From positions 147,085 to 211,084 of the IMG/VR virus record IMGVR_UViG_3300017991_000001: a stretch of 64,000 bases of DNA. One strand, 5' to 3'. Made by a program: the position numbers and the translations under genes. This document shows positions 9,219 through 60,902 of this stretch, piece by piece. The stretch's first letter is position 1. The number at the start of each line of letters is the position of its first letter. The notes under the pieces were generated by a model. It was given only the letters and a program-made list of their open reading frames with translations. It was not told the origin of the DNA and did not search any database.

Positions 9219-9683
9219 ATGCCGGGTAAGCGTGGAATCGGTGAGGCGGACTTCGTAACGCCCCGCCAGGTATACCGGGAGGATGTCGATGCCGTCGACA
9301 GTGGCGGCGTCACGGACACGGACATCCCCATCCTGGACAGCCGCGAGCTGGCGACTCAGCGACAGGGGTTGGGTCAGGGCGACGTGGCGCAGTACGGGCG
9401 CAACGCGCAGTTGAACCTGGCTTGCATCCCTGAAGGTTTTTCCAGCGTCACGATGCAGTTGTGGCTCTGGGCCGACGTGGAGGAGCCGCTCGAACCGGGT
9501 ACCTCTTCCTCTTCGTACGGCGTGCTGCCGACCACGGAGGAGTGGGTACAGGTCGAGGAAAAGACGATCACGGGACCGGAGTTGTGGGTTGTCAAAGACG
9601 TTCCTCCGGGGCAATATAAGGTTATCGTCACGGCCAAGACAGGCAGTGGCCATCTTCAGATCCGCGAGCAACACGCAGCGTAA
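9219..9683 (+). CDS. hypothetical virion protein with a short Ser tract
   Basis: GAGG RBS; beta-rich; PGTSSSSY. Confidence 0.7.
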   Translation: MPGKRGIGEADFVTPRQVYREDVDAVDSGGVTDTDIPILDSRELATQRQGLGQGDVAQYGRNAQLNLACIPEGFSSVTMQLWLWADVEEPLEPGTSSSSYGVLPTTEEWVQVEEKTITGPELWVVKDVPPGQYKVIVTAKTGSGHLQIREQHAA

Positions 9684-9697
9684 GGAGTGAGGAGAAC

Positions 9698-9943
9698 ATG
9701 AGAACGACCATCACTAACACTTCGGGCGCGGAAAAGACCTTCGGGTGGATTCCTCCGCACGGGCACACCTTGGCGAACGGAGCATCCGTCGTCATTGAGG
9801 GCGACCTGCGCACGATCCTGGGAGGCGGCCGTGGTCGATACTCCAGGGGTCAGGAGCTTGCGGGCCTCAACGACGCGGTCACCCGCGGCCAAGTGACGGA
9901 AGAGGAGACCGTCGGTCCGTCCAGCTCTTCGAGCAGCGCCTAA
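9698..9943 (+). CDS. small protein with FGWIPPHG domain and C-terminal poly-Ser
   Basis: GAGGAG RBS; homologous to the N-terminus of the 59643 protein; ends GPSSSSSSA. Confidence 0.7.
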   Translation: MRTTITNTSGAEKTFGWIPPHGHTLANGASVVIEGDLRTILGGGRGRYSRGQELAGLNDAVTRGQVTEEETVGPSSSSSSA

Positions 9944-10043: not shown

Positions 10044-10967
10044 ATGGCATTCGCGAACGAATGCATTGACGCTCAGGGGGTCTGCCCCAACCGCATCCCG
10101 TTCCTGGTGACCGGGCAGTGCGCCGTGGAGTCGCTGTACATCACCATCAAGGACATCAACAGCGGCGAGCCCATCGACCTGACTCAGTACGGGATCTTCT
10201 CCTCGTCGGACCCGAGCAGCTCATCGTCCTCGTCTTCCTCCAGCTTCTTCAGCAGCAGCTCCTCCTCGGGGGGCGACGACCCGGAGGACGGAGTCGAGTT
10301 CGTGGCCAAGGAGCTGCCTAAAACGCCCACGTACCTCTTCAAGAAGTACGGCGTCGTGGAGAGCGAGGAGGACGCGCGGAACGGTCGGGTGCGCCTGGAC
10401 GTGACGGCCGAGGACACGGCCCGCGCGGGGATCTGGTCCGCGATGGCCGGCGTCTGGTACAACGGCTACATACGCAAGCTGATGCCGTTCTACTACGAGG
10501 TCCAGCCCAACCTGCTGGCCGACTACTGGAACGGCCCCCTGACGACCTACCAGCTGCGCCTGTACCTGCGGGACAAGTGCGCTGAAGACAACTTCCTGCT
10601 CGACGACACGGAGTTCAAGCAGGAAGAGCTGCACGCGATGATGATCAAGGTGATCGACGAGTGGAACGAGGAGCCGCCGCCCGGCTTCGAGTCCAACCCG
10701 GTCGACTTCCCCTACCGTCACAACTGGGCCGAGGCGGTCATAGGCGAGCTGTTCACCATGGCGGCCTACCAGCTGCGCCGGAACAAGCTGGACTACACCG
10801 CCGGCGGGGTGCAGGTGGACGACGAGGCCCGCTGGGAGATGTACCTGGCCCGCGCGAAGGAACTCAAGTCGGAGTGGAAGGCGTTCATCATCCGCAAGAA
10901 GATCGAGCTGAACATTGAGGGTGGTTTCCAGAGCCTGGGAGGGTATCGGCACACGATACCGCGATAG
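10044..10967 (+). CDS. putative head-tail adaptor/neck protein with a poly-Ser insert
   Basis: C-half LRLYLRDK..DNFLLDD..NKLDYTAGGVQVDD resembles connector proteins; position after the capsid operon. Confidence 0.5.
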   Translation: MAFANECIDAQGVCPNRIPFLVTGQCAVESLYITIKDINSGEPIDLTQYGIFSSSDPSSSSSSSSSSFFSSSSSSGGDDPEDGVEFVAKELPKTPTYLFKKYGVVESEEDARNGRVRLDVTAEDTARAGIWSAMAGVWYNGYIRKLMPFYYEVQPNLLADYWNGPLTTYQLRLYLRDKCAEDNFLLDDTEFKQEELHAMMIKVIDEWNEEPPPGFESNPVDFPYRHNWAEAVIGELFTMAAYQLRRNKLDYTAGGVQVDDEARWEMYLARAKELKSEWKAFIIRKKIELNIEGGFQSLGGYRHTIPR

Positions 10968-12719: not shown

Positions 12720-13697
12720 ATGACAGACGTGCCGGTCCTACAGGGTTACGACATCTCGGCCATCGACTGCGATGTGTTCGAGCGTATCCAGATCCAGACC
12801 AACCCTCTGGGCGGCAACGTCATTGCGTGGGGCCTGCAGCAGGGCTTCAATCAACCCGGTCCCTATCACTTCTACGTGGACTTCGGCCGCTCCGGCACCA
12901 ACGAGTGGGAGGTCCTCAACCAGACCCCCGTCGTGGACGACTGCTTCTTCGTGGACCCCTGCCAGCGCCACTGGGACACGCTGGTCGACTACTTCTACAG
13001 GGTTCGCCTGGTGCTGCCCAGCGTCAAGGACGACGCCGGCAACTGTGTAGCCTACGTCTCCCAGCCCCAGCAGGCCAACGGGCTGTGGAACAAGAAGGAC
13101 TGGCTGAAGGCGCGCTACATCATCCGCCAGGAACTGAAGTTGCAGGACAAGGCCACCACCCAGACGTCGAAGGGTGTGCTGCTCAAGCGCCGGCGCTACG
13201 GCGAGCAGTCGGTGACGACCACCACCTGGGACGTCGGCGAGATCCAGCACACCGGTTCCACGGTGGATTACGGGACCGGCATCGTGGGCGGGTACTTCCG
13301 GGCCATCGATTACCGGATCACCTTTGACACGCCCTGGCGGCGCGAGTTCGGGCGCGACAACCCCACCAAGGGCACCACGCACGAGATCAAGCGCTCCGGG
13401 CGGGCCATCGCCTACCCCTACGTTGAACACGACGATGTGTTCCATCGGCTGGACAGCGGAGAGCGCTTTGTCATCAAGGCGGTGGAGACCGTCGCCGAGA
13501 TCGGCAACATCCCGATCATCGTGAAGCTCGAGTTGAGCCTTGCCCCAACGACCGCTGAGATTTATAAGATACCCCTTTCAGGGGGTTCCTCGTCCGCCGC
13601 GCCTGAGTCGTCGGACAGTTCGGAGTCAAGCCCAAGCGGCGTCGAACCCGAGAGCTGCGGCCCCACGGCCCGCATCGATGACGCCGGAGAGTGGTAA
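12720..13697 (+). CDS. putative neck/head-closure protein
   Basis: GAGG RBS; YGTGIVGGYF and GERFVIKAV motifs; position; Ser-rich C-terminal tail. Confidence 0.5.
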   Translation: MTDVPVLQGYDISAIDCDVFERIQIQTNPLGGNVIAWGLQQGFNQPGPYHFYVDFGRSGTNEWEVLNQTPVVDDCFFVDPCQRHWDTLVDYFYRVRLVLPSVKDDAGNCVAYVSQPQQANGLWNKKDWLKARYIIRQELKLQDKATTQTSKGVLLKRRRYGEQSVTTTTWDVGEIQHTGSTVDYGTGIVGGYFRAIDYRITFDTPWRREFGRDNPTKGTTHEIKRSGRAIAYPYVEHDDVFHRLDSGERFVIKAVETVAEIGNIPIIVKLELSLAPTTAEIYKIPLSGGSSSAAPESSDSSESSPSGVEPESCGPTARIDDAGEW

Positions 13698-14790: not shown

Positions 14791-17598
14791 ATGCCGTCGT
14801 ACGTGCTCCCCCAGGTACTGGTCTTTCAAGAGTTTGAAGCCCAGCCCGCGCAGATCGCGCAGCCGCAACACGCGTGCATTGTGGGTCCCCACTACAGCCT
14901 CCACCGTTACACCGAGGAGCGCTCCGAGATCTACGTGGGCACCTATGATCCGCTCAACGAGGAATGCTTTGCCTGGCCCAACCGGCCGGCGGGCGGCGAG
15001 GTGGACCCGGACTACACGCGGGTCTACATGGAGAACGCCCTCCTCCAGTACTTCAACGACCCCGCGGGCGACAGCTCGCTGGTCAACCACGTCGCCCCCG
15101 GCAAGAACCGCATCCGGGCCGACTCCAAGATCTTCCAGACGGCCAACGGCTACGCCCGCAGCACCGACTTCCTCCGGGACGTCCAGGTGGGCGACGTGGC
15201 CAAGGTCCTGGCCAGCTCCTGTGGCGAGCCGGTCAGCCTGGTCGCCAACATTGTCGGCCTGGTCGCCGACGTGCTGGCCGCCGTGGTCGATTCGGCCGAG
15301 GTCGATATCGACAACCAGGCCGCCACCGTGGCCTCCACCGCCGACGCGCAAACGGCCGGCGCCATCAACAACGTGGGCGTCGACTCGGTCGACGGCTCCA
15401 GTTACGACGGCCTGCCGGACGGCGAGCCTTCCGAGACCTACACCATTGAAGTCATTGCCGGCTCCACCGGAGGGGACGCCACCTCGGCCCTTCTTCGGGT
15501 GACCTCGGCATCCGGGCTCGACAACGTGGCCGAGGTCACTCCGGCCGCATTCGCATCTCCGACCTCCATTGGCACCCGGGGCCTGACGGTAACCTTCGTC
15601 AACAACACCGGCAGTTCTTCGAGCGGCCCCGGCGGCCCGGTCGACCCCGACGACTTCCTGATCGGGCAGACCTGGGAGGTCGAGGTTTCGCAGACCTTCA
15701 CGCCGGCCACGCCGGCTTCGGGCGGCACGTACGGCGGCGCGGCGGACACGACCTACATCGTGGAAGTCACCCGCGGCGGGCTGTTCTCGAGCTCCACCAA
15801 GCCCCAGATCACGGTCACCACGACCACGGGCATCGACATCTCCGGCCCGACGGAAGTGCCCGCCTCCGCCACCGCGGTGGTGGTCGGCACCCAAGGCGTG
15901 ACCATCGCCTTCACGGGCGCGGGCCTGAACAAGGGCGACCGCTACACGATCGCCGTGGAAGCGGCCAAGGACGGGCCGGTCCGCACGCTGGTGCTGGACC
16001 GCAACCTGCCCGATGCCCTGCGGGGTGTCTGTGACGCGGGCACGTCCTCCTCGTCCAGCGGCGCGCCGCCGGACCTGGACCTGACGCTCTACGTCAAGAA
16101 GGACATCGAGGTGACCGAGGAACGCCTCGGCTCGCCGCCCCTGGTCAACTGGGAGCAGAGCGATACGGAGATCTGCCTGAAGTCCGGCATCACCGCCTTC
16201 GACAGCGACTTCCAGTCCGGCGGAAGCCTGGTGGCGCTGCCCGTCATGGACGGCGACATCTACATCAACTACCGGGCGATGCTCTCCACCCGCTGCAGCA
16301 CGGTGGGTTCGATCAGCGACGTCTCGGAGGTTTCCGGGGCGCTGGGTTCGGTCAGCCCGGACAACCCGCTGGCCTTCGGCGTCTACAAGGCGCTGGAGAA
16401 CAACAACGGCGAGGACGTGAAGTACCTGGCCGTGTGTGACGACAGCGGCAACGTGGACGCCACGCTGGAGCCGTGGCTGGACGCGCTGGAGATTCTGGTG
16501 GGCCGGGACGATGTCTACAGCCTGGTCCCCCTGACCCAGTACAAGCCCGTCTGCGACGCCTTCCTGGCGCACTGCTCGGCGCAGTCCACGCCGGAGAACG
16601 GCCGCTGGCGGATCACGTGGCTCAACCTGGCCGCCGAGGAGACCATCGGCGTCTACACGACCAGCGCGGTGGGCGGCGGTCCCGTCCTGGCCACGATCAC
16701 GGACGACCCCGACACCTCCGGCACGCAGTACACGCTGGTGGAAGCGGTCGGCGAGCAGTTCGTGACCAACGGGGTGCGGGCCGGCGACACGGTCCGGGCG
16801 CTGTACACCTCCGACGGGTTCGGCAACTACACCTACACCGAGTTCGTGGTGGACGCCGTGCTCAACGAGGAGTCGATTCGTTTGGTCACGGGACCGGACG
16901 CGGCGGTCAACACGCCCTCCAAGATCGAGATCTGGAGGACGCTCAGCAAGGACGAGCTGGCCACCGAGATGGCCACCAAGCCGGGCCTGTTCAGCAGCCG
17001 GCGCGCCTACCTGGTGTGGCCGGACACGCTCGGCAACGCCGGCGTCACTTTCGAGGGGTTCTACCTGTGTTCGGCTCTGGCGGGGCTGCGCTCCGGCGTG
17101 CTCCCGCACCAGGGCCTGACCAACGTGGAGATCAACGGGTTCGACGACCTGTCCCGCACGGTCGACTTCTTCAGCGCCAACCAGCTGAACACGATGGCGG
17201 CCAGCGGGTACTGGATCGTGACGCAGGACCCGAGCGACGGTTCGGTCTTCACCCGTCACCAGCTCTCGACGGGCGACCAGGACGAGCTGAACGAGAAGGA
17301 ACAGAACATCACCACCAACCTGGACAACATCTCGGTGAACTTCCTGATCCGCATGAAGCAGTTCATCGGACGCGGGAACGTGACGCCCACGATGCTGGCC
17401 ATCCTGCGCGGTGAGATTCTGGGACTGATCGAGCAGTTCAAGAACACGATCATCAACGACCAGTTAGGACCTCAGATCCTGAACGCTGAGATCCTGGAAC
17501 TCAGGCCGGACGATGTGCTGGGAGACCGGATCATCGCCCGCATCGACGTTGAGCTGCCGTACCCGCTCAACAACCTGGAGCTGCACCTGGTCGCTTAA
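14791..17598 (+). CDS. contractile tail sheath protein (935 aa, with large insertions)
   Basis: N-terminal YVLPQVLVFQE; C-terminal sheath-like region (GLRSGVLPHQGLTN, RHQLST, VELPYPLNNLELHLV); precedes the tube gene. Confidence 0.8.
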   Translation: MPSYVLPQVLVFQEFEAQPAQIAQPQHACIVGPHYSLHRYTEERSEIYVGTYDPLNEECFAWPNRPAGGEVDPDYTRVYMENALLQYFNDPAGDSSLVNHVAPGKNRIRADSKIFQTANGYARSTDFLRDVQVGDVAKVLASSCGEPVSLVANIVGLVADVLAAVVDSAEVDIDNQAATVASTADAQTAGAINNVGVDSVDGSSYDGLPDGEPSETYTIEVIAGSTGGDATSALLRVTSASGLDNVAEVTPAAFASPTSIGTRGLTVTFVNNTGSSSSGPGGPVDPDDFLIGQTWEVEVSQTFTPATPASGGTYGGAADTTYIVEVTRGGLFSSSTKPQITVTTTTGIDISGPTEVPASATAVVVGTQGVTIAFTGAGLNKGDRYTIAVEAAKDGPVRTLVLDRNLPDALRGVCDAGTSSSSSGAPPDLDLTLYVKKDIEVTEERLGSPPLVNWEQSDTEICLKSGITAFDSDFQSGGSLVALPVMDGDIYINYRAMLSTRCSTVGSISDVSEVSGALGSVSPDNPLAFGVYKALENNNGEDVKYLAVCDDSGNVDATLEPWLDALEILVGRDDVYSLVPLTQYKPVCDAFLAHCSAQSTPENGRWRITWLNLAAEETIGVYTTSAVGGGPVLATITDDPDTSGTQYTLVEAVGEQFVTNGVRAGDTVRALYTSDGFGNYTYTEFVVDAVLNEESIRLVTGPDAAVNTPSKIEIWRTLSKDELATEMATKPGLFSSRRAYLVWPDTLGNAGVTFEGFYLCSALAGLRSGVLPHQGLTNVEINGFDDLSRTVDFFSANQLNTMAASGYWIVTQDPSDGSVFTRHQLSTGDQDELNEKEQNITTNLDNISVNFLIRMKQFIGRGNVTPTMLAILRGEILGLIEQFKNTIINDQLGPQILNAEILELRPDDVLGDRIIARIDVELPYPLNNLELHLVA

Positions 17599-42044: not shown

Positions 42045-42941
42045 ATGGCCGAGCTGGAATTTCTCGACCACATGGACAAGATCGCCTTCCCGCTTGTGAA
42101 CGGGGACGACCGGTCCTTCGTCGGCGGAGGCGCGCTGCCGCGGCAGGGCCTGTCCGACGCCGGCTTCCTGCTGGGGGTCGACAGCGGTTTCGTGGCCGCC
42201 ACGCACACGGTCCGCCTGTACAGCTACGCGCGCTCCGGCAGCACCATGTCATTCGACTTCCGCTCCGACGCCATGGTCGAGCACCGCTTCCTGTTCGAGG
42301 TGCCTGCGACCACATCGTTCGGCAAGGCGTTCAGGGTGACGGCCACGCGGATCGTGGGGGGCGCCTCCGCGCCCAGCTACGGCGAAGGCTACATCGTGGT
42401 CGGCAACCTGGAGGAGCTGGAAGCGCTGGGGGAAGGCACGTTCCTGTTGACGGGAACACTGCGGGTGGAGCCGGCGCTGCTGCAACCCCTGGTCAACACG
42501 CTGATGAACACGCTGAGCATCGCCAACGAGCCCAGGCTGTGCCCCACCGTCCCGGGCAGTTCCGCGGTGCCCGAGCCGGACTACGTGTGCCCCTTCATCA
42601 AGAACCTGGACGGGGCGATCAAGTTCTCCGAGGGCAACAACGCCCGGGTCTCCGTGGACGCGGACAACAACGTGCTCCAGCTGGGCGGTGCCGTCGGGGC
42701 GGGGCTTGGAGAGCCCTGCGAGGATGTTATCATCGACGAGGACTGCGGGTTCACGCGCGGGGAGGAGTGCGACCCGTGCGACGATTACATCCGTTCGTTC
42801 AACGGGATGCAGACGGAAGACGGGGTGATCTACTTCACAGAGGGACCAGGGGTGGTGGTCATCAACGAGCCGGACGACCACCGCATCCGCATCGTGATCG
42901 ATTCGGACCTGAGGACGTGCACGTCCTCATCGACGCCGTGA
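42045..42941 (+). CDS. tail/baseplate paralogue 5
   Basis: EFLDHMDKIAFP; GAVGAGLGEPC; SFNGMQTEDG. Confidence 0.65.
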   Translation: MAELEFLDHMDKIAFPLVNGDDRSFVGGGALPRQGLSDAGFLLGVDSGFVAATHTVRLYSYARSGSTMSFDFRSDAMVEHRFLFEVPATTSFGKAFRVTATRIVGGASAPSYGEGYIVVGNLEELEALGEGTFLLTGTLRVEPALLQPLVNTLMNTLSIANEPRLCPTVPGSSAVPEPDYVCPFIKNLDGAIKFSEGNNARVSVDADNNVLQLGGAVGAGLGEPCEDVIIDEDCGFTRGEECDPCDDYIRSFNGMQTEDGVIYFTEGPGVVVINEPDDHRIRIVIDSDLRTCTSSSTP

Positions 42942-46802: not shown

Positions 46803-47198
46803 ATGCTGCATCTACCTTTCAAGCTGTCGCCAACGGGCAGGGCGGAGCGTCCCAAGATCAACCGGCCCGCGCCTGCGCCCGCGCCTGCGCCCGCGCCTGC
46901 GCCCGCTCCCGTAATAGAACCCGAGGAAAACGTGTCGCACATGATAACGGACGACAACGTGTTGGACTTGCTGGACAACCAGCGCGTACTGTCGTTTCTT
47001 CCACACCTGGGTCCTGCCTTTAGCGGGTGGAAACCCAAGAAACCTTGCCCGCGAGAAGAGGAGCGCAGGGAGTACGCCAAGGTGCTCCGGCGCATGCTTC
47101 GCCACATGAAGCCGAAGCGCAGACGCCTGCTCAAGAAGGCTCTGCGTGTGAGGCGGCTGACGTTCAGTCTTGAAGGCGGTCCCGCGGAAACAATTTGA
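46803..47198 (+). CDS. small basic protein with (PA)n linker; paralogue family A
   Basis: GAGG RBS, ATG 46803; ITDDNVLDLLDN..V...PHL. Confidence 0.6.
   Translation: MLHLPFKLSPTGRAERPKINRPAPAPAPAPAPAPAPVIEPEENVSHMITDDNVLDLLDNQRVLSFLPHLGPAFSGWKPKKPCPREEERREYAKVLRRMLRHMKPKRRRLLKKALRVRRLTFSLEGGPAETI
46866..46910 (+). repeat. 12-bp tandem repeat CCCGCGCCTGCG x3+ encoding PAPA
   Basis: Directly visible in the sequence. Confidence 0.85.
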
Positions 47199-47254
47199 TC
47201 TTCCGCCATTCATCAGTATATTCGATACCCCTTAAGAACTTCGCGGAGAAAACC

Positions 47255-49054
47255 ATGCGCGTATTCGTCCTGGGCATCCCCCACACGCAGACCACGATCG
47301 AGTTCACGACCTGTGCCTACACCATGAAGGTGTGGAACCTCTGCCGCATGCTGCACCGCCGCGGCCACGAGGTCATCCACATGGGCACGGAAGGGTCCAA
47401 CCCGGACTGCACGACCCACGTGTCGGTCACGCCGCTGGAGATGTGGGAGGAGCTGTACGGCCATCCGGGTGCGGGCTTCTACCAGACCAGCGCCGACGGG
47501 AAGTTCGCCCCGTACCACAACATCTACGAGCAGAACGTCCGCAGCGAGCTGTTGCAACGCGGAGGCGACCCCAACACCTCGATCGTCTGCGTGCCGTGGG
47601 GCGGCGCCCAGTTCAGGGCGCTGGAGGGCGTGCCGCAGCTGGCCTGCGAGAGCGGCATCGGCTACCACATCACCCAGCTGCAGAACCGGGTCTTCGAGTC
47701 CTACGCCTGGCTTCACTTCCACTGGGGCCGCGAGAACAAGCACGACGGCAAGGGCTGGTTCGATGCCGTGATCCCCAACGCCTTCGACCCCGAGATGTTT
47801 CCCTTCTCGCCCAAGGACAAGCGCAAGGACTACTTCCTCTTCATCGGCCGGCTGAACTGGGACAAGGGCGTGCCCATCGCCGTGGACGTGACCAAGCGCA
47901 TTGGCGCCAAGCTGAAGATCGTCGGCCCCGGCAGCCCCGAGCAGTGGGTCAAGGACAACCCGCACGTGGAGTACCTGCCGCCGGTGGGCGTGGAGGATCG
48001 CAAGAAGCTCATGGGCGAGGCCATCGCCACGTTCGTGCCCACCCAGTACCTGGAGCCCTTCGGCGGCGTCAACGTCGAGGCCCAGATGACGGGCTGTCCG
48101 GTGATCACCACGGACTGGGGCGCCTTCCCCGAGACGGTGCTCCATGGCATCACGGGCTACCGCTGCCGCTCCATCGAGCAGTTCGTGTGGGCCGCGAAGA
48201 ACATCGACCAGCTCGACCCGGCCAGCTGCCGGCAGTGGGCGCTGGCCAACTACTCGCTGGACCGCATCGCGCCCATGTACGAGGAGTACCTGCAGATGGT
48301 GCTCAATCGCAGGGGCCAGGGCTTCTACCAGGAGTTCCCGGAGCGCAAGCAGCTGATGTGGATGACCAAGGCCTTCCCGGCGGCGGCCACCGCGCAGCCG
48401 GCCATCCCGAAGGAGCACGTGGCCCCCAAGATCGACACGGCCTGGGAGCACGCGATCAAGTGGGAGGCGGAGTGGTGGGGCAACGAGCCCAACGAGCGCT
48501 GGGCGGCCGAGGTGGACAAGCAGAAGACCTACGCCCGCCTGATGGGCCTGCCGTACGACCTGGACATGGGCAAGAAGAACATCCTGGACGTGGGCTGCGG
48601 CCCGACCAGCATGCTGCTCAGGGCCAAGCACGGCGGCAAGTCGGTGGGCGTCGATCCGCTCCCCGTCTCCAAGAAGACAAAGGCCCGCTACAAGGACGCC
48701 AAGGTTAGGCTGTTCACCGTCAAGGGCGAGGACCTGTTCAACCCGGGCAACGGCACCAACACCCTGCGCGGCGCCACCTTCGACGAGGTCTGGATGTACA
48801 ACTGCCTGCAGCACTGCGACCAGCCGGCGATCATCCTCTCGCGCATCGCGCTGGCGGGGAAGGTCATCCGCATCTTCGAGTGGCTCAACATGGGCGTGGC
48901 TCCGGGCCACCCTCACAACCTGACGGAGAAGCTGTTTGAACTCTTCCGTAACCCGGAAATGTGGGTACAACATATCTGGAACACCGGCGTGCTGCGGGAC
49001 TTCGGCGGCACCGTGAACAACAATTACCTGGCCATCCACGTGGAGCGCAAGTGA
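47255..49054 (+). CDS. GT-B (GT4-like) glycosyltransferase fused to a SAM-dependent methyltransferase
   Basis: LFIGRLNWDKG, EPFGGVNVEAQMTGCPVITTDWGAFPETV; C-terminal ILDVGCGP and FDEVWMYNCLQH. Confidence 0.9.
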   Translation: MRVFVLGIPHTQTTIEFTTCAYTMKVWNLCRMLHRRGHEVIHMGTEGSNPDCTTHVSVTPLEMWEELYGHPGAGFYQTSADGKFAPYHNIYEQNVRSELLQRGGDPNTSIVCVPWGGAQFRALEGVPQLACESGIGYHITQLQNRVFESYAWLHFHWGRENKHDGKGWFDAVIPNAFDPEMFPFSPKDKRKDYFLFIGRLNWDKGVPIAVDVTKRIGAKLKIVGPGSPEQWVKDNPHVEYLPPVGVEDRKKLMGEAIATFVPTQYLEPFGGVNVEAQMTGCPVITTDWGAFPETVLHGITGYRCRSIEQFVWAAKNIDQLDPASCRQWALANYSLDRIAPMYEEYLQMVLNRRGQGFYQEFPERKQLMWMTKAFPAAATAQPAIPKEHVAPKIDTAWEHAIKWEAEWWGNEPNERWAAEVDKQKTYARLMGLPYDLDMGKKNILDVGCGPTSMLLRAKHGGKSVGVDPLPVSKKTKARYKDAKVRLFTVKGEDLFNPGNGTNTLRGATFDEVWMYNCLQHCDQPAIILSRIALAGKVIRIFEWLNMGVAPGHPHNLTEKLFELFRNPEMWVQHIWNTGVLRDFGGTVNNNYLAIHVERK

Positions 49055-49512
49055 GCGTCGTCGCACACATCATGGAAGAGGTGGAGCCGGGCCTGTATGC
49101 AGACTCCGCGAACCACCTGAAGATCGTGCGAGCCGTGCTGTCCAGGGCCAGCTACCGCCCCCGCAGCCACGGTGTCGAGCACTGCCCGCCCGACGTGGTG
49201 GAGTACTACCGCACGCAGACCAACATGCGTTACCCCTACAGGGCCGCGTTCACGGACAGCTTCACGAACCGCGTGCGCCGGTTGCCGGGCGACATCGTTG
49301 TGGCGACCGAACCGTGGCACCGGGAGTGCTTCAAGGGACTCCTGCGTAACGGCGCGTGGGACGGGATGCATGTCATTGAACTGCTACGCCAGGAGGGAGA
49401 GGACGCTCCGATCGCGACCGCCCGGATGACCCTGGCGCTGTCGGAGCTGAACAGATGCCCGAACCGGTTTGCATCAAAAATACGCAGAGTCCTGGAGACT
49501 ACATTGTCCTGA
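49051..49512 (+). CDS. hypothetical protein
   Basis: GTGA overlap with the upstream stop; codon bias; overlaps the next gene by ~58 bp. Confidence 0.5.
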   Translation: MSVVAHIMEEVEPGLYADSANHLKIVRAVLSRASYRPRSHGVEHCPPDVVEYYRTQTNMRYPYRAAFTDSFTNRVRRLPGDIVVATEPWHRECFKGLLRNGAWDGMHVIELLRQEGEDAPIATARMTLALSELNRCPNRFASKIRRVLETTLS

Positions 49513-51206
49513 CGGCGGCACTGCGGGACATCACGCTGTGCTACCCGGGCGTCTTCCAGTTCACCGCGGCCACGCCGGAGCCGGACATCTGGCGCAACAA
49601 CCCGCTGGTGAAGCACGGGGATAAGCGCGGCATCAGGCGCATCGTGGCCAGGTACTCCTCGCCCAACAACCCCTACCGCATCCACAAGTCCAACCAGGCC
49701 CGCGCCCACTTCATGTGGTCCTTCCTGGCCGACCTCAACCTGATGCTGAAGACCCACGCCGTGCTGACGGACTTTCGTCCGGCACTGTACCTGACCGAGG
49801 AGGAGAAGGCCACGCCCCTGCTCCAGACGGACAAGCCGTACTGGGTGATGGTGGCCGGCGGCAAGCGGGACTTCACGGCGAAGTGGTGGGACAAGGACCG
49901 CTGGCAGCAGGTGGTCGACCGCGTCAAGGACAGGGTGACGGTCGTACAGGTGGGCGGAGGCAGCCACATCCACCCAAGACTCACGGGTGTGCATGACCTG
50001 GTGGCCAAGACCTCCTTCCGCGAGCTGATGCGGCTGATCTACCACAGCCACGGGGTCTTCTGCATCGTGACCTGCCTGATGCACATCGCCGCGGCCTTCA
50101 ACAAGCCCTGCGTGACGGTGGCCGGCGGCCGGGAGCCGTGGTGGTGGGAGGCGTACAACGAGGAGAACCGCCTGGCCAACATGCGGATCGGCCGGGCGGA
50201 CTGGAAGCCGCCCGAGCCCGACACGTTCATCCCGCACCGGTACATCTACCTGGAGTGCGACAAACCCAAGTGGAGTGGCGGGCGGGGGTGTTGGAAGAGC
50301 AAGCTGGAGGGTGGGAACAAGTGTGAGGATATCGTGGCCACGCAGACGGGTCTCAGGCTCCCGCACTGCCTGGACAAGATCACGGCCGAAAGGGTGGTCA
50401 AGGAGTTCGAGTGGTACTACGAGAACGAGATCCTGTCGCTGGACAAGAAACTGATCCTGCCTCCCATTATCCCCGCCATTCCTTCAAGCAACGCCTATCC
50501 GACCCCACAGGCGTACGTGCCGAGCAAGTCGAAAGCCAAAGTACCCAAGGGCAGGGCGCAACCCACGCCCCTCTGGCATGATGTGGCCAAGCCGGCACCC
50601 GAACCGAACCTGGACAAGACCCACCTGTTCGTATACCTGGGCGGCCAGACCAGGCTGGACTACCTGAACCAGATACGGGAGCGTTCCCCCCGCGCGGCGC
50701 TCACGGCTGTCTGCAACACCGCCTCCGGCGAAGTGGACAACTGGTGCAAACACAACGCGGCCGAGGCCGTCATGGACGGGGCCGAACCGGGGCGCCCGGA
50801 GATGCTCTACCGCGCGCTCTCCGACGCCAAGCGCGAGCAGCTCGTGTGGATCGAGTACCCCGTCATGCCGCGTGCCGGCCACTGGGGCAGGTACCTTACG
50901 CCGTTCCCCGATAAGTCCTTCGGCGGCTGCTTCTACTGGCAGCGCATAACCGACGGGCATGAGCAGCTGATGAAGTCATCTCCGTGGGCAAAGGGTTGGA
51001 ACCCCCGGCAGCATGGCACGGAAGGCTTCGCCACCATGGTCTTTCCGCTGCGCGGGTACTTGGTGCTTCCGCGAAGCCTGGTCGGTCGTATAGAATGGGC
51101 GTGCAGGCACGTGCCCGACGCGGCGTTCGAGCTGGTGCTGGGCGCGCTGCTGAGCCAGTGGCAGACACCTCTGTTGGACTTGGGCCATACGGTGGAACAC
51201 CAATGA
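49455..51206 (+). CDS. GT9-like (heptosyltransferase-type) glycosyltransferase with an extra C-terminal domain
   Basis: SPGDYIVLTAAL, AKWW..DRW, DLVAKTSFRELMRLI, MHIAAAFNKPCV motifs. Confidence 0.8.
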   Translation: MPEPVCIKNTQSPGDYIVLTAALRDITLCYPGVFQFTAATPEPDIWRNNPLVKHGDKRGIRRIVARYSSPNNPYRIHKSNQARAHFMWSFLADLNLMLKTHAVLTDFRPALYLTEEEKATPLLQTDKPYWVMVAGGKRDFTAKWWDKDRWQQVVDRVKDRVTVVQVGGGSHIHPRLTGVHDLVAKTSFRELMRLIYHSHGVFCIVTCLMHIAAAFNKPCVTVAGGREPWWWEAYNEENRLANMRIGRADWKPPEPDTFIPHRYIYLECDKPKWSGGRGCWKSKLEGGNKCEDIVATQTGLRLPHCLDKITAERVVKEFEWYYENEILSLDKKLILPPIIPAIPSSNAYPTPQAYVPSKSKAKVPKGRAQPTPLWHDVAKPAPEPNLDKTHLFVYLGGQTRLDYLNQIRERSPRAALTAVCNTASGEVDNWCKHNAAEAVMDGAEPGRPEMLYRALSDAKREQLVWIEYPVMPRAGHWGRYLTPFPDKSFGGCFYWQRITDGHEQLMKSSPWAKGWNPRQHGTEGFATMVFPLRGYLVLPRSLVGRIEWACRHVPDAAFELVLGALLSQWQTPLLDLGHTVEHQ

Positions 51207-51554: not shown

Positions 51555-52040
51555 ATGACGACCGTGCCGACCGAGTTCTATACGGGTGACAGCAGCCGCT
51601 ACATCAAATTGCAGCGGGAGGGCATGACCACCTACGTGAGCGGCCGCACGCAGGGCTTCCGCGTGCGGATCACGGCCATCGAATCCAACGAGATGCCGCT
51701 GGAGATCTTCGTCTACCAGCACCTCCCCTTCCCCGACAGCGAGACCGGGTACCAGGACCGTTTCGTCAACATTGCCAGCCCCAACGACATCGAGGAGTAT
51801 AATGTGGGTGAGGTGGGGGATTCCACGCGCCCCTTCTTCCGGCTGGCCGCGATCGACCTGGTCTTCCGCAACGATGACATGCTCGAGGAGGCGGTCCAGA
51901 AGATCTACGACGAGATCGGCCAGCTCGTGGAGAGCCTCAACTACATGGACGACCTCGAAGTGCAGGAGGAAGTGACCATTGGGACACCGCCAACTAGTTC
52001 CTCCTCCTCGTCCTCCGATTCAAGCTCGAGCTCGTCCTAA
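51555..52040 (+). CDS. hypothetical acidic protein with C-terminal poly-Ser
   Basis: Ends PPTSSSSSSSDSSSSSS. Confidence 0.75.
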   Translation: MTTVPTEFYTGDSSRYIKLQREGMTTYVSGRTQGFRVRITAIESNEMPLEIFVYQHLPFPDSETGYQDRFVNIASPNDIEEYNVGEVGDSTRPFFRLAAIDLVFRNDDMLEEAVQKIYDEIGQLVESLNYMDDLEVQEEVTIGTPPTSSSSSSSDSSSSSS

Positions 52041-56980: not shown

Positions 56981-59642
56981 GCCTTCTCCTCCAAACGATT
57001 TATCGCGCCACGTACCGCCTGCTTCGATACTAGCTCCGGCAGGGATAACCGTCAAGGATGTGACCCCCGAGGTTACCGACTGTCCCTTCTGTCATGAGCA
57101 TACGCTCTCCATCTACATGGACCCCATCCTGTCCGGCACGGGAAGATGGCTCAGGTGTTCCGCTTGTGGCAATCAGGGGGACACCATAGAGACGTACGGT
57201 CGCATGCTCGGCATCGACGACGTCAGGAAAGCGTTCCAGCAGGTGGTTGCCGACGGGCTCTTCAAAGCCTCCTGGCACGAGGTCACACCCGACATTGTTG
57301 ACAGCTACATCGCCAACTACCCCGGTCATCGCAGCCGCCTCGAAGGGTATTGGGAAAAGTTAAGGGACACCATCAATAATGTCGATCCCCGCATGGTGGC
57401 TCGAGGCCACGGCGACCACTTGTGGGGCGGCTGGAACACGTGTACCAAGGGCCGGCTCCGGCGTTTCCTGGGTGGCGGCAAGCGCAGAGACATCATCGAC
57501 ATCTTCGGCGACCGAAAGATCCTTCCTCGAAGGGGACATAATACCAACTTCGTCCTTAACTACCAGGATGTACCGGGCAGGATTTGCGCCTTTCAGTTCC
57601 TGGGCGAGGAGGCGGACACGCTGAAAATGTTCCACCGCTCCGGCAAGCGCACCGGCGGAGAGGGCGGCCTGTCCATGCTGGATGTCCTGGAGCCTTACGA
57701 GGACACCGTTTACGCGCTGGGCAGCCCACGCACCGCGCTGCTGATGCAGCAGTACAAGATGGGCACGCTGCCCGAACCCCTGAAGATGGTGGTGTACAAC
57801 CAGCACACGCGCAAGTCCTGGGACAGCATCTCGGCCCGGCGCGTGATCTTCTGGGAGGCGGCCCCGTCGCAGGAGCTGTTCGCCCAGGTGCGACAGATCG
57901 GGCTGGGCGCGGGGTTCGTGACCCACAAGCCGAACCTGCGCAAGCGTTCGGACCAGCTGCACGTCTACCTGTGCGAGCAGGGCCTGGAAGGGTTCATGCG
58001 GATCATGCAGCGCTTCGCCCGCCCCTGGCCGGAGGCGCTGGCCAAGTGGATCATCGACCAGAACATGGACGAGGGCCTGCTCCGGGGGTTGGCCAGCAAC
58101 CTGCAATTCGACCACGACGAGCGCCTGGCCATCATCGACGCCTTCCCCTCCCGCTACCGCGATCAGGTGGAGTTCTGCCTGGGCGACGAGCGCATCACCC
58201 TCAGCACGTTCGTGAAGGGGTCCGGCGTGGTGGAAGCCGACGGCGTGTGGAGCGCCATGCGCGGTTCCAGGGAGCGGGAGCTGGTCTCTGACGCGATCAT
58301 CAAGATCCTGCGCGAGATCACCGACGAGGACACCAAGAAGGTCTACTGGGACGGCTTCATCCGCTTCAAGGGCGAGCAGATCCCCTTCAACGAGCCGGTC
58401 GAGAACATCGAACTCAACCCGCGCAGGTGGTTGATCGGGGCGGTGGAGGCGGCCGGCCTGGGACGGCCCAACATACAGCACAGCTGGTCCAAAAGCCTGA
58501 TGCAGCTCGCGCAGCAGTTCTCCACGCCGCAGCGCATGTTCGGGACGTCCAGGCTGGGCATCCGCTCCGACGGGCGCGTCATCTTCCCCAACTTCACGAT
58601 CGAAGGCGGCCAGGCCAAGGAACAGCGGACCGTGATACGGGCGCAGGACTGCCCGGCCGCGCACATACACCCGCCGGTCAAGCGCCGCCTGCGGGACTGC
58701 GATGAGCCCTGCCCGGAAAGGTCCCTCTTCACGGCCATGATGACCTCTTTCGTCTCAGGCCTGATCGCGCCGCTGTTCGGCGACGAGCCCCGTCCCGTGG
58801 CGGTGGTGGGCCCCATCGGATCGTTCGGCCGTAGCATGGCACAGACCTTCTGCAAGCACGCCGGGATGCGCACCATCGAGCTGGAGGACGGGAAGTGGTC
58901 CGTGATCGACGGGGCACAGCAGCGCGTGGGCCTGCACAACTACCCCGTCATGCTCGACACACGTGCGCCGGGGCTGCTGAAGGACTGGAGCCACAAGCGC
59001 TCGAAGCACCTGTTCATGACCACGGACGTGGTGGAGGCTTCGGCCCTGTGCACGGGCGCCAACTGGGTGTTCATCTACGGGCAGAAGCTGACTCCGCTTA
59101 CACGAGCCATCGCGCCCTTCGACGACGTGCTCTGGTACCTGGCCGACCTGCAGCGCCGCAGGTATGAGCTGCCCCATGGCCAGGACCGTGAGGACGCTGT
59201 ACTCAAGGACATCTGTCTATGGTATGAAGGGTATCTGAGAAAGGAGGATTTGAGCCGTTATAATGAAACGCGCAAGGTGATGGCCACGGCCATGTCGCCC
59301 AGCATGGCGGCGATGCGCCTTTACTGCCACCTGTACCGGCAGAAGCTGGTCCGGCGGGACTACGAACCGTTCATGGCCAACGTGGCCGCCGGGGGCTCCA
59401 TAGGCAAGAAGAGCAGCAGCATCGTGATCGACATGGAGGAGGAGCGCGTATTCCTGTCCAGGGCCAGCCTACGCAACGCGGCCAAGCGAGCGGCCGTGCC
59501 GGCGCCGGACCTGGTGAAGATCTCCGAGGACCTGATGGAATGTGGCGCGCTATTCGAGACGGGGGCGTCCCTGGACGGATGGGTCGTCTCCCTGAAGGAT
59601 TGGGAGACGCTTGTCGCGGACTGGCAACGGTGGGACCTGTAA
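56979..59642 (+). CDS. primase/helicase-like protein with N-terminal zinc finger (possibly degenerate)
   Basis: CPFC...WLRCSACGNQGD resembles primase Zn-binding domains; AVVGPIGSFGRS is a degenerate Walker A; start uncertain. Confidence 0.5.
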   Translation: MPSPPNDLSRHVPPASILAPAGITVKDVTPEVTDCPFCHEHTLSIYMDPILSGTGRWLRCSACGNQGDTIETYGRMLGIDDVRKAFQQVVADGLFKASWHEVTPDIVDSYIANYPGHRSRLEGYWEKLRDTINNVDPRMVARGHGDHLWGGWNTCTKGRLRRFLGGGKRRDIIDIFGDRKILPRRGHNTNFVLNYQDVPGRICAFQFLGEEADTLKMFHRSGKRTGGEGGLSMLDVLEPYEDTVYALGSPRTALLMQQYKMGTLPEPLKMVVYNQHTRKSWDSISARRVIFWEAAPSQELFAQVRQIGLGAGFVTHKPNLRKRSDQLHVYLCEQGLEGFMRIMQRFARPWPEALAKWIIDQNMDEGLLRGLASNLQFDHDERLAIIDAFPSRYRDQVEFCLGDERITLSTFVKGSGVVEADGVWSAMRGSRERELVSDAIIKILREITDEDTKKVYWDGFIRFKGEQIPFNEPVENIELNPRRWLIGAVEAAGLGRPNIQHSWSKSLMQLAQQFSTPQRMFGTSRLGIRSDGRVIFPNFTIEGGQAKEQRTVIRAQDCPAAHIHPPVKRRLRDCDEPCPERSLFTAMMTSFVSGLIAPLFGDEPRPVAVVGPIGSFGRSMAQTFCKHAGMRTIELEDGKWSVIDGAQQRVGLHNYPVMLDTRAPGLLKDWSHKRSKHLFMTTDVVEASALCTGANWVFIYGQKLTPLTRAIAPFDDVLWYLADLQRRRYELPHGQDREDAVLKDICLWYEGYLRKEDLSRYNETRKVMATAMSPSMAAMRLYCHLYRQKLVRRDYEPFMANVAAGGSIGKKSSSIVIDMEEERVFLSRASLRNAAKRAAVPAPDLVKISEDLMECGALFETGASLDGWVVSLKDWETLVADWQRWDL

Positions 59643-60902
59643 ATGGCCCGTAACCCACAGGCCTTGACCATCGTCAAGAACATCTCCGGCGGGGGACTGT
59701 TCTTCGGGTGGATTCCTCCGCACGGCCGCTACCTCGAAGACGACGAGCGGATCGAAATACAGGGTACGCTCGAGACCCTCTTCCAGACGGACCCCAACAA
59801 GACCTACCTGCGCGAGTACCTGCGCGACATCGCCGACCAGCGTGTCGAGGTTTCCCACGAGGCCGGCTCCACGGTCGCCGCGCACACGCCTGTCGACGAC
59901 AACTTCGAGCTGGCCAACATCACCAGCGCGGAAGCCGAGTTCTACCGGGACCAGATGCTGTGTCTCTCGGAGGAGTCGGGCCTTTACCGTTTCGACGCGC
60001 AAAGCACGCTGACACCCGACGCCGACAAGGTCGTCATACCGTTCGACCTGCCGTCCGTGGCGCTGCCCGGACGCTGGATCAAGCTCACCGGGCCGGCTGC
60101 GGTGGTTACGCCGGGACCGACGGGCGTCACCGGGGTCACGGGTGCGACCGGGGCCGACGGGGTCACGGGTGCGACCGGGGCGACAGGCGTCACCGGTGCC
60201 ACCGGTGCGGGCGTGACGGGCGTGACGGGTGTGACGGGTGTGACCGGTGTCACGGGTCCTCCCGGCATGGGCACCGCGATCAAACTGGAAGTCGCGGACA
60301 TCGACAACCCGATCGAGCTGCATGGCGTCCAGGGCGACGAGAACGGGAAGCTGGCGGTTGTTTCACAGGTCAACGAGTGCAACAACGATTTCACCATCTA
60401 CTCGTGGGATTCGGGGGAGGCGCCGTCCAGCTCATCTTCGTCCTCTTCCTCGTCGAGCTCATGTGAACCTGAGGACATACCTTACACTGTGGATGGGGCG
60501 GTCGGCCGCTGGATCGCGGTGGGCGGCAAATACATCTACAACCTCCAGGACACAGGTGATTTCGACGGAGATCAGATAGTCACGTCCGGCAGCGGAATTA
60601 CAACGATCTCCACTGTTCCGGTGCCCGACAATACGGTTATACTGATCACAGTGTGGGTCTCGTGCCGGCGCCTCGACGACGAGGACCGCGGAGGGTATCA
60701 GCGTCAGGCGCTCGTGTACCGGGAAGGGGGCGGAACTGCCAAGAGGCAAGGCAACACGCAGACCCTGTTCACGAGGGAGTCGGTGGGCCAGTACCAGGTC
60801 TTCATCAATGTGAGCGGGAACAACGCGCTGATCCAGGTGCGGGGCCGCGTAGGCCATACGGTTAGATGGAAGAGCAAGTACTTCACCACGGAGGTCGCGT
60901 AA
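59643..60902 (+). CDS. collagen-like fibre protein 1 (FGWIPPHG N-domain, G-X-T repeats, poly-Ser)
   Basis: GVT/GAT triplets; 12-Ser tract; C-terminal [12 protein letters not shown] domain. Confidence 0.8.

What the first reader, a model, noticed from the sequence alone, without database searches (positions are those of the whole stretch)
9501..60461. Mixed-codon poly-serine tags on about a dozen predicted virion proteins: candidate O-glycosylation tags
Seen: Ser runs in the 9219, 9698 (C-end), 10044 (~10198-10268), 12720 (C-tail), sheath (~15612, ~16045), 35466 (~36405-36443), 39706 (C-end), 42045 (C-end), 44777 (internal and C-end), 51555 (C-end) and 59643 (~60426-60461) proteins. They mix TCN and AGY codons (e.g. 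AGT TCC TCC TCC TCG TCC TCC GAT TCA AGC TCG AGC TCG TCC at ~51996), so they are not simple slippage microsatellites. Several are free C-terminal tails, so not inter-domain linkers. They are absent from the capsid, tube, leader-tagged cargo and enzymes. Known: some mycobacteriophages glycosylate capsid and tail proteins using their own glycosyltransferases. Inference: poly-Ser is a portable acceptor tag that coats neck, sheath, baseplate and fibres with glycan.
Basis: partly seen in the sequence, partly recalled or inferred. Interest (0 to 1): 0.85.

Follow-up and report, generated by a model that had tools for sequence, protein, structure and literature searches.

The report
Poly-serine tags on phage tail proteins
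An uncultured 211-kb jumbo phage carries short runs of pure serine in floppy loops and tail ends of about a dozen neck, sheath, baseplate and fibre proteins, and comparative genomics links such runs to a phage heptosyltransferase-like enzyme, which suggests but does not prove that they are sugar-attachment tags.

Summary
The window's gene set has 13 Ser runs of at least 4 residues (0.32 expected) and 8 of at least 6 (0.0013 expected). No other amino acid does this, and the codons are mixed. The runs lie only in neck, sheath, baseplate and fibre proteins. They are absent from capsid, tube, RNA polymerase and other upstream genes. In orthologues of 35-67% identity they keep their position but vary in length. 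In the sheath model they are two of the five segments with pLDDT below 50, and the only ones inside the N-terminal half.

The GT4-methyltransferase (47195/47255) does not track the tracts. The GT9-like enzyme (49455) is a core gene of the phage family, present in tract-free relatives too. However, outside the family, 14 of 31 loci holding this GT9 subtype encode an extremely Ser-rich protein within 10 kb, often the adjacent gene, against 0 of 78 GT4 control loci. The GT9 domain folds like the heptosyltransferases WaaF, TibC and WaaC. The gene after it (51555) has a Ser-rich C-tail across the family.

A counter-example exists: the tract-richest lineage has no GT at the conserved site.

Best reading: disordered poly-Ser acceptor tags for a GT9-type O-glycosyltransferase, confidence about 0.5. 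The main rival is unmodified flexible linkers.

The parts
9504..9515 (+). Ser run (S4) in g9219 (9219-9683), a neck-region protein
   Evidence: Orthologues carry S6-S8, or three runs, at the same place.
9920..9937 (+). C-terminal S6 tail of g9698 (81 aa)
   Evidence: Orthologues L002, L005, L009 and L065 end in S5-S6.
10200..10268 (+). Ser-rich insert (S3, S10, S6) in g10044
   Evidence: S5-S12 at the matching place in L002, L003, L007 and L009; none in distant relatives.
13608..13631 (+). SSDSSESS near the C-end of g12720
   Evidence: Orthologues carry S5-S7 at about aa 300, also in a second lineage, L034-36 and L065/66.
14791..17598 (+). Tail sheath gene with Ser loops at 15613-15624 (aa 275-278) and 16045-16059 (aa 419-423)
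   Evidence: Fold matches phage and contractile-injection-system sheaths. Segments with pLDDT below 50 are 1-19, 274-282, 417-422, 827-830 and 927-935, so the two tracts are the only such loops in the N-terminal half. Length varies from 4 to 11 in homologues, and the loop is deleted in the distant clade.
36396..36443 (+). S13 loop in g35466 (baseplate-module protein)
   Evidence: A variable loop between the conserved blocks WWxxDC..PW and PEC. It is Ser/Thr/acidic in tract-free relatives.
41236..41256 (+). C-terminal S7(GP) tail of g39706
   Evidence: The orthologue in L078 ends FPS9GP and the one in L158 has S12.
42924..42932 (+). C-terminal SSS(TP) of g42045
   Evidence: S6+A in L078, and a (S5PP)n array in L158.
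46469..46492 (+). S5-FG-S in g44777 (fibre-like, lower GC3). A second run, S4+A, lies at the C-end, 46775-46786.
47195..49054 (+). GT4-type glycosyltransferase fused to a SAM methyltransferase. The likely true start is ATG 47255.
   Evidence: Pfam Glycos_transf_1 2.5e-16 and Methyltransf_11 5.1e-05, the only methyltransferase model above its Pfam cut-off (24.3 vs 21.2 bits). phrog_3408 2e-85. Homologues align from aa 21.
49455..51206 (+). GT9-like (heptosyltransferase-fold) enzyme: N-domain aa 1-335 plus a variable C-part
   Evidence: Pfam PF01075, 52.1 bits against a cut-off of 22. The profile hits WaaF and WaaC. AF2 pLDDT 87.5; the top 30 fold hits are all GT9 proteins (WaaF, TibC, WaaC and an uncharacterised Veillonella GT9). 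Invariant GD, GGKxD..K.W, MH.AAA and GGRE motifs plus four conserved Cys.
51555..52040 (+). Small protein directly downstream of the GT9 gene, with a C-terminal S7-D-S6 tail (51996-52037)
   Evidence: The gene pair is conserved across the family. Ser is 28% of the last 12 aa against 8.5% in the body, over 59 orthologues.
60426..60461 (+). S12 linker in the collagen-like fibre protein g59643
   Evidence: The collagen repeat is at aa 157-208; the C-terminal domain, aa 308-418, is homologous to L006.

Best explanation
The poly-Ser runs are short, intrinsically disordered, surface-exposed segments: loops, C-terminal tails and inter-domain linkers. They have been installed on many neck, sheath, baseplate and fibre proteins of one lineage of uncultured jumbo myoviruses of about 200 kb.

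Proposed mechanism. In the infected cell the phage's GT9-like, heptosyltransferase-fold enzyme (g49455) transfers a sugar from a nucleotide-sugar donor onto the serine hydroxyls of these tags. ADP-heptose is the obvious candidate donor. The GT4-methyltransferase fusion (g47195) may extend and methylate the glycan. The assembled tail would then carry a glycan coat.

The conserved partner of the enzyme is the small protein encoded directly downstream (g51555), which has a Ser-rich tail. The same tag appears to have spread to other virion proteins by conversion of pre-existing Ser/acidic loops and tails into pure poly-Ser.

Shown: the tracts, their non-randomness, conserved position with variable length, predicted disorder, restriction to tail-module proteins, the fold and conserved motifs of the enzyme, and the genomic association.

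Inferred: the transfer itself, the donor, the role of the second GT and the benefit of a glycan coat.
For: 1. Non-random and Ser-specific, with mixed codons.

2. Position is conserved and length varies in orthologues of 35-67% identity, for nine proteins.

3. In the sheath model (pLDDT 84.8) the two Ser tracts are among the five segments below pLDDT 50, and are the only ones inside the N-terminal, non-core half.

4. There are 13 runs in 16,436 aa of the tail module. There are none in 2,932 aa of head-module proteins or 5,952 aa of upstream proteins that include RNA polymerase (binomial p = 0.006).

5. The g49455 N-domain is a GT9 enzyme with invariant motifs. Among them is the N-terminal GD motif, which aligns with the GD motif of WaaC and WaaF in weak N-terminal HMMER segments (scores 1.3 and -0.0 bits). 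The top 30 fold hits are all GT9 proteins. TibC, which O-heptosylates serines of autotransporters (PMC4358343), scores as well as WaaF and slightly better than WaaC: TM 0.56-0.60 and rmsd 5.4-6.2, against TM 0.43-0.58 and rmsd 6.6-9.8 for the other GT9 structures.

6. Among 31 loci from viral contigs that hold this GT9 subtype but no marker gene of the phage family, 14 encode a protein with at least 3 runs of S5 or longer within 10 kb. Examples are proteins of 556 to 1342 aa with 28-48% Ser. Among 78 loci found with the GT4 domain, none does (Fisher p = 1.7e-9; about 8 of 21 lineages after rough dereplication, p = 1e-6). Tract density is 35 against 0.4 per 100 kb.

7. In six lineages the Ser-rich gene lies 0-656 nt from the GT9 gene. 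The proteins that carry the tail are not homologous to each other (hhalign probability 3%), so the tag looks portable.

8. L239 shows collagen-like gene, then a 1008-aa Ser-rich protein, then GT9, GT4, GT2, methyltransferases and a sugar epimerase. This is a full glycan-building cluster beside the Ser-rich protein.

9. On the GT9 tree, 17 of 19 Ser-rich-positive loci fall in one supported clade, which holds the window's enzyme.

10. The protein downstream of GT9 has a Ser-enriched tail across the family, even where no run exists (18% against 8.5%).
Against: - No chemical evidence of modification exists.
- The GT9-like gene is kept by at least 19 family loci with no tract in 20 kb, so the enzyme does not need poly-Ser.
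- Homologues in Planctomycetota genomes have no Ser-rich neighbours.
- The tract-richest lineage (L181, L183, L185; 17-34 tracts per locus) has no GT9 or GT4 homologue and no Pfam GT where relatives have GT9 followed by the g51555 gene. A clade-specific motif scan found no GT9 on those contigs. The contigs are incomplete (94-120 kb), so absence from the genome is not proven.
- The GT4-methyltransferase shows no association with tracts.
- The association could in part reflect shared residence of GT9 and Ser-rich proteins in fibre modules.
- Sequence profiles link g49455 to LPS heptosyltransferases, not to TibC.
Confidence: 0.5

Rival explanations
1. The tracts are unmodified flexible, hydrophilic spacers, working as linkers or entropic bristles. 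They would resemble the poly-serine linkers of secreted carbohydrate-active enzymes in Saccharophagus, Teredinibacter and Cellvibrio. They would give reach and solubility to surface domains. The GT genes would act on something else, such as host envelope sugars or the collagen-like fibres.
For: - Several tracts are clearly linkers: g59643 between the collagen region and the C-domain, and long S-arrays between domains in relatives' fibre proteins.
- In tract-free relatives the same loops and tails are Ser/Thr/Glu/Asp-rich, as for ordinary disordered segments.
- GT9 is kept without tracts, and the tract-richest lineage lacks the local GT.
- Poly-serine linkers are described for the bacteria named above (PMC2386152 and PMC2699552, listed).
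- Tail length varies from 0 to 70 residues between near-identical phages.
Against: - It does not explain why Ser-rich proteins sit next to this GT9 subtype in 8 or more separate viral lineages but in none of 78 GT4 loci. About 30 of those GT4 loci also hold collagen-like fibre genes.
- It does not explain short C-terminal tails of 4-7 Ser, which link nothing.
- It does not explain pure Ser in place of the usual mixed linker composition.
Confidence: 0.3
2. The tracts are acceptors for a different modification, for example phosphorylation, glycerol-phosphate or acylation, made by a host or phage enzyme that was not identified here.
For: Serine hydroxyls accept many modifications. The L183 lineage has tracts but no GT nearby. 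Streptococcal Ser/Thr-rich disordered regions carry more than one kind of decoration (PMC12041528, listed).
Against: No kinase or other transferase was found among the 48 or so window proteins scanned against Pfam or PHROGs. About a dozen window genes were not scanned. The only enzymes in the module are the two GTs and the methyltransferase domain. The cross-lineage signal is specific to GT9.
Confidence: 0.07
3. The tracts are neutral low-complexity expansions, from replication slippage followed by codon drift, that are tolerated in exposed loops and have no function.
For: Length is highly variable, from 0 to 70 residues between close relatives. The poly-Ser-rich state changes at least 6 times on the phage tree. 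Some sub-runs repeat one codon 5 times.
Against: - Only Ser expands, although Ala, Gly and Leu are commoner.
- The same sites are kept across 35-67% identity in nine proteins.
- Tracts occur at GC contents from 28% to 67%, so base composition does not drive them.
- Tracts are absent from 8,900 aa of non-tail proteins.
Confidence: 0.08

Closest known systems
Bacterial autotransporter heptosyltransferases (BAHT: TibC, AAH) that O-heptosylate many serines of AIDA-I and TibA (PMC4358343)
   Same: The fold is a cytoplasmic GT-B enzyme of the GT9 type, with TM 0.56-0.60 to TibC. The N-lobe GD motif aligns with that of WaaC and WaaF (weakly). A Cys-rich insertion follows the donor-binding motif. The proposed chemistry is multiple O-linked sugars on serines of a surface protein before export or assembly.
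   Different: There is no sequence-level hit to TibC. There is no N-terminal beta-barrel. The Cys spacing differs from the TibC iron finger. The substrates would be disordered poly-Ser, not serines in a beta-helix. The system is encoded by a phage and would act on virion proteins.
Mycobacteriophage virion glycosylation (Che8 and other cluster F1 phages; Freeman et al. 2023, as summarised in PMC11256854)
   Same: Phage-encoded glycosyltransferases are thought to coat virion proteins with glycans.
   Different: In those phages the glycans are on the major capsid protein (PMC11256854), and also on the tail tube by my recollection of the primary paper. Here capsid and tube never carry tracts. The enzymes there are not reported as GT9. 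The host phylum and phage type differ, and no poly-Ser tag is described.
Serine-rich repeat glycoproteins of Gram-positive bacteria with GtfA/GtfB (PMC7948813)
   Same: Very Ser-rich, disordered regions are encoded next to dedicated cytoplasmic glycosyltransferases. Relatives such as L239, L252 and L267 have proteins of 1000-1342 aa with 28-48% Ser beside a GT cluster.
   Different: Those repeats are mixed Ser-rich repeats by my recollection, not homopolymers. The initiating enzyme is a GT4-type GtfA/B pair, again by my own knowledge and not tested here. Export uses the accessory Sec system. None of this was found here.
Poly-serine linkers of secreted glycoside hydrolases (Saccharophagus degradans, Teredinibacter turnerae; PMC2386152, PMC2699552)
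   Same: Homopolymeric Ser runs with mixed codons join folded domains of extracellular proteins.
   Different: Those are bacterial secreted enzymes with no dedicated GT next to them. Here many runs are terminal tails or loops of 4-13 residues on virion proteins.

Membership tests
GT9 heptosyltransferases (Pfam PF01075; WaaC/WaaF type) | Match to the family model above the curated cut-off | tested here: met
   g49455 scores 52.1 bits against a cut-off of 22. The profile of 19 orthologues hits WaaF at 2e-07 and WaaC at 5e-06.
GT9 heptosyltransferases (Pfam PF01075; WaaC/WaaF type) | GT-B fold with an N-lobe catalytic Asp and the C-lobe donor motif | tested here: met
   AF2 pLDDT is 87.5 and pTM 0.90. 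The top 30 fold hits are all GT9 proteins (heptosyltransferases plus an uncharacterised Veillonella GT9). Invariant G14-D15 aligns with the GD motif of WaaC and WaaF in weak N-terminal HMMER segments. MH.AAA..P.....GGRE is invariant.
GT9 heptosyltransferases (Pfam PF01075; WaaC/WaaF type) | ADP-heptose donor and an LPS core acceptor | not testable with these tools
   This needs an enzyme assay. No heptose-synthesis genes were seen among the window proteins scanned.
BAHT protein-serine heptosyltransferases (TibC/AAH) | Sequence relatedness to TibC or AAH | tested here: not met
   No TibC chain appears among the profile hits up to E = 1.
BAHT protein-serine heptosyltransferases (TibC/AAH) | Structural similarity of the catalytic domain | tested here: met
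   TibC chains rank 2-17 with E of 4e-10 and higher, TM 0.56-0.60 and rmsd 5.4-6.2. This is as good as WaaF and slightly better than WaaC.
BAHT protein-serine heptosyltransferases (TibC/AAH) | Four-Cys iron-finger insertion in the C-lobe, and an N-terminal beta-barrel | tested here: inconclusive
   Four conserved Cys (C268, C279, C290, C305) and two His lie in an insertion after GGRE, with partly low pLDDT. Their spacing is unlike TibC's C339/342/358/370 (PMC4358343). There is no N-terminal barrel: the GT domain starts at residue 3.
Phage virion glycosylation of the mycobacteriophage Che8 type | Phage-encoded GTs, with glycans on the capsid and tail tube subunits | tested here: not met
   GTs are present. 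However, capsid g7786 and tube g18324 carry no tracts in any of 44-61 orthologues. Glycans themselves cannot be tested here.
Serine-rich repeat glycoprotein systems (SRRP with GtfA/B and aSec) | A Ser-rich repeat protein encoded beside dedicated GTs | tested here: met
   Met in relatives L239, L252, L267, L232 and L247. In the window only the short-tag form exists.
Serine-rich repeat glycoprotein systems (SRRP with GtfA/B and aSec) | GtfA/GtfB pair and accessory Sec export genes | tested here: not met
   No such families appear among the window proteins or the L239 cluster proteins that were scanned.
Poly-serine linkers of secreted CAZymes | A homopolymeric Ser run joining two folded domains | tested here: met
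   Met for g59643 and for fibre proteins of L005, L160 and L183. Not met for the C-terminal tails of g9698, g39706, g42045, g44777 and g51555.

The most novel reading that the evidence does not exclude
A portable, minimal acceptor tag (a run of serines) and a soluble phage GT9-type enzyme form a general virion O-glycosylation system. The system would be shared by horizontal transfer among several groups of large uncultured phages. It would range from 4-13-residue tags on a dozen tail proteins (this phage) to 1000-aa Ser-rich fibre proteins with full glycan-building clusters (L239, L252, L267). It would be the first virion glycosylation system outside actinobacteriophages, and the first protein-targeting GT9 enzymes outside the autotransporter heptosyltransferases.
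Probability: 0.4. Interest if true: 0.85.

Novelty: new variant of a known kind. Interest (0 to 1): 0.72.

Why it matters
If the tags are glycosylated, tail, baseplate and fibre glycan coats would be a common feature of a large clade of environmental jumbo phages that has never been cultured. That bears on adsorption, protease resistance, particle stickiness and recognition by host defences or grazers. It would also yield a very simple enzyme-and-tag pair, a cytoplasmic GT and a run of serines, for protein glyco-engineering.

Even if the tags are unmodified, the analysis gives three usable results:
- a positionally conserved marker of exposed loops in otherwise unannotatable virion proteins;
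- a well-defined GT9 subfamily with a testable substrate hypothesis;
- a family-wide gene pair (GT9 and a small Ser-tailed protein) to test first.

Tried and rejected
- Megablast of 24 kb against the phage records found nothing. tblastn with the sheath found only remote Vibrio and Salmonella phage hits at 28-29% identity, so no annotated relative exists.
- Pfam and PHROGs gave no family for nearly all tract proteins.
- The tail-fibre protein g42949 was tried as an anchor for relatives. It is too fast-evolving, with full-length homologues only in the close clade, so the conserved g41204 was used instead.
- One look-up failed because the start codon I chose differs from the recorded gene call.
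- The Freeman 2023 paper is not held in the library.
- Literature searches for polyserine or poly-serine with phage found nothing relevant.
- I asked whether the small Ser-tailed proteins next to GT9 in other viruses are homologues of g51555. They are not.
- I asked whether GT47195 might be a DNA glycosyltransferase, because its best PDB relative, 7FG9, is also the best structural match of a putative DNA GT of phage RL38J1. This could be neither confirmed nor excluded. Its position among fibre genes and its frequent neighbourhood with collagen-like genes suggest a protein or envelope target.
- PHROGs on the Ser-rich proteins and their neighbours in other viruses gave no structural annotation.
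- GC content as the driver of the tracts is rejected. Tract-free relatives reach 64-71% GC, and tract-rich loci range from 28% to 67%.

Full report
**What the window is.**
The window is the last 64 kb of a 211,084-bp IMG/VR contig, IMGVR_UViG_3300017991_000001. It has 64% GC and nearly all genes lie on the + strand. It holds the head, neck, tail, baseplate and fibre module of an uncultured jumbo myovirus.
- g7786 is the major head protein (phrog_2522).
- g14791 is the tail sheath by fold.
- g28998 is a Baseplate_J protein.
- g59643, g60906 and g62132 are collagen-like fibres.
- 6-18 kb upstream, the phage encodes split multisubunit RNA polymerase genes.

No cultured or annotated relative exists. 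However, the sheath has more than 680 metagenomic homologues, many on contigs of 140-230 kb, so this is a large family. I fetched 76 loci around the sheath, 52 around the conserved baseplate protein g41204, 80 around GT4 homologues, 80 plus 26 around GT9 homologues, and 12 from cellular genomes.

Yes.
- In 19,486 residues with 6.5% Ser there are 13 runs of four or more (0.32 expected) and 8 of six or more (0.0013 expected).
- Ala, Gly, Leu and Val are commoner than Ser but show almost no runs.
- Tract codons mix TCG, TCC, AGC, TCA, TCT and AGT in roughly the genome's own proportions. No single codon is repeated more than five times.

Three small corrections apply. The g12720 tract is sub-terminal, not a free tail. 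The g42045 run is only three residues here. The g59643 tract is an inter-domain linker.

**Are the tracts under selection?**
The tracts keep their positions in orthologues that share only 35-67% identity, while their length changes.
- Sheath: S4-S8 at about aa 275 and S4-S11 at about aa 419 in most homologues down to about 53% identity. In the more distant clade the second loop is simply deleted.
- The same holds for g9219, g9698, g10044 and g12720, for g39706, g42045 and g51555, and for g35466.
- Capsid, tube, g18814, g24113, g37356 and g41204 never acquire tracts in dozens of orthologues.
- In the window phage, 13 runs fall in 16,436 aa of the neck-to-fibre module. None falls in 2,932 aa of head genes or in 5,952 aa upstream that include RNA polymerase (p = 0.006).

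**Where are the tracts in the proteins?**
The AlphaFold model of the sheath has mean pLDDT 84.8. Segments below pLDDT 50 are the two termini (1-19, 927-935), a short stretch at 827-830, and residues 274-282 and 417-422, which are the two Ser tracts. Both tracts lie in the beta-rich N-terminal half, which is additional to the conserved sheath core. By analogy with solved sheaths this half faces outward; that step is inference.

In g35466 the tract fills a variable loop between two conserved Cys-containing blocks. In tract-free relatives the same loop is 12-20 residues of Ser, Thr, Glu, Asp and Pro, often with alternating Ser. The C-tail of g51555 orthologues is Ser/acidic in tract-free phages and pure Ser in tract-rich ones. 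So the tracts look like conversions of pre-existing exposed, hydrophilic segments.

**How is the trait distributed?**
Poly-Ser richness is lineage-specific and independent of GC. The window's clade (L001-L005, L007, L009) is rich. Many relatives with 45-71% GC have none. On a tree of two conserved baseplate proteins the rich state changes at least six times. Some relatives are extreme, with arrays such as S8-W-S8-D, (S5PP)10 or (S7Q)10 in fibre-like proteins.

**The two glycosyltransferases.**
*g47195 (true start probably 47255)* is a GT4-type enzyme fused to a methyltransferase.
- Its GT domain has more than 550 relatives in unrelated viral contigs.
- Those loci hold 5 tracts in 1.17 Mb and no Ser-rich protein.
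- About 30 of 79 of them hold collagen-like genes.
- Within the family it occurs only in the window, its closest relative (L078), L173 and L013. The last two are tract-free.

*g49455* is different.
- Its N-terminal 335 residues are a GT9 domain with invariant motifs.
- The model is confident (pLDDT 87.5). Its top 30 structural matches are all GT9 proteins: WaaF, TibC, WaaC and an uncharacterised Veillonella GT9. TibC is the protein-serine heptosyltransferase of enterotoxigenic E. coli (PMC4358343), and it scores as well as WaaF and slightly better than WaaC.
- The gene is a core gene of the family. It is nearly always followed by the g51555 orthologue, including in at least 19 loci without any tract.

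Presence or absence within the family is therefore uninformative.

**The informative signal comes from outside the family.**
Thirty-one loci hold this GT9 subtype but no family marker gene.
- 14 of the 31 encode a protein with at least three S5-or-longer runs within 10 kb. None of the 78 GT4 loci does (p = 1.7e-9; about 8 of 21 lineages after rough dereplication, p = 1e-6).
- Examples: a 1008-aa, 28%-Ser protein 39 nt from GT9 in L239 (GC 28%); a 1342-aa, 48%-Ser protein in L252; a 971-aa or longer, 42%-Ser protein on a 461-kb contig (L267); and a 250-300-aa protein with a 45-70-residue Ser tail 155 nt from GT9 in L244, L247 and L249.
- L239 adds GT4, GT2, methyltransferases and a sugar epimerase in the same cluster.
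- The tail-bearing proteins are not homologous to g51555, so the tag is what recurs, not the protein.
- On the GT9 tree, 17 of 19 positive loci fall in one supported clade that contains the window's enzyme.

**Evidence against.**
- Nothing here shows a sugar on a serine.
- The enzyme persists without tracts.
- Homologues in Planctomycetota genomes lack Ser-rich neighbours.
- The tract-richest lineage (L181, L183, L185) has no GT between its fibre genes and its g51555 orthologue, and no Pfam GT in 20.7 kb. A clade-specific scan found no GT9 on its incomplete contigs.
- The plain-linker reading accounts for the long arrays between domains and for the composition shift of ordinary disordered segments.

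**Verdict.**
The tracts are real, selected, disordered surface tags of tail-module proteins. The most likely function is as acceptors for O-glycosylation by the GT9-type enzyme, possibly elaborated by the GT4-methyltransferase (confidence about 0.5). Unmodified linkers or bristles are the main rival (about 0.3). Its proposed test gives a negative answer for one enzyme and a neutral one for the other, while an unplanned cross-virus comparison gives the positive evidence. I did not find the system described in the literature available here. It is best seen as a new variant of known protein O-glycosylation systems: BAHT, SRRP and mycobacteriophage virion glycosylation.

Noticed in passing
L210:1650-3488 and L211:1-6243 (6-18 kb upstream of the window start on the same phage): The phage encodes split multisubunit RNA polymerase pieces. 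One is a 2310-aa beta/beta' fusion that carries an intein with a LAGLIDADG endonuclease. This recalls the phiKZ-like jumbo phages.
   Followed up: no
L079-L156 (GT4 loci); window 47195-49054 and 59643-63178: Homologues of the GT4 domain (phrog_3408) occur in more than 550 unrelated viral contigs. About 30 of the 79 fetched loci also hold collagen-like fibre genes, sometimes adjacent (L084, L013). The collagen-like fibres may be this enzyme's target.
   Followed up: partly
L294-L301: GT9-like homologues of 31-35% identity occur in Planctomycetota genomes, including the isolate Planctopirus hydrillae JC280. This may hint at the host phylum or at the source of the gene. No Ser-rich proteins lie nearby there.
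   Followed up: partly
window 36330-36470 (g35466 aa 290-345) and its orthologues: The tract sits in a loop bounded by conserved Cys residues (WWxxDC..PW ... PEC). Many tracts in relatives are likewise flanked by Cys, which suggests disulfide- or metal-closed loops.
   Followed up: partly
L256:9355-9939 versus L259:9166-10065 and L251:9313-9939: Near-identical phages carry the same GT9-adjacent protein with no Ser tail, a 14-residue tail or a tail of about 70 residues. Tail length therefore changes very fast.
   Followed up: no
L163, L171, L174, L177, L187, L199 (C-ends of the long GT9 homologues): The long forms of the GT9 protein (600-900 aa) end in a conserved motif resembling RRG[YF]SExFPW. 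The window's 583-aa protein lacks it. Its function is unknown.
   Followed up: no
window 8805-9209 and 11511-12710: Two ORFs have GC3 of about 0.5 against about 0.85 for their neighbours, and have no detectable orthologue in any related locus. They may be recent insertions or partly mis-called genes.
   Followed up: no
window 7357-7737 and 28664-28933: The only other long homopolymer runs in the gene set are G8 in g7357 and P6 in g28664.
   Followed up: no
L239:5002-17641: A complete glycan-building cluster in a 28%-GC viral contig: collagen-like protein, 1008-aa Ser-rich protein, GT9, GT4, GT2, two methyltransferases and an NAD-dependent sugar epimerase.
   Followed up: partly
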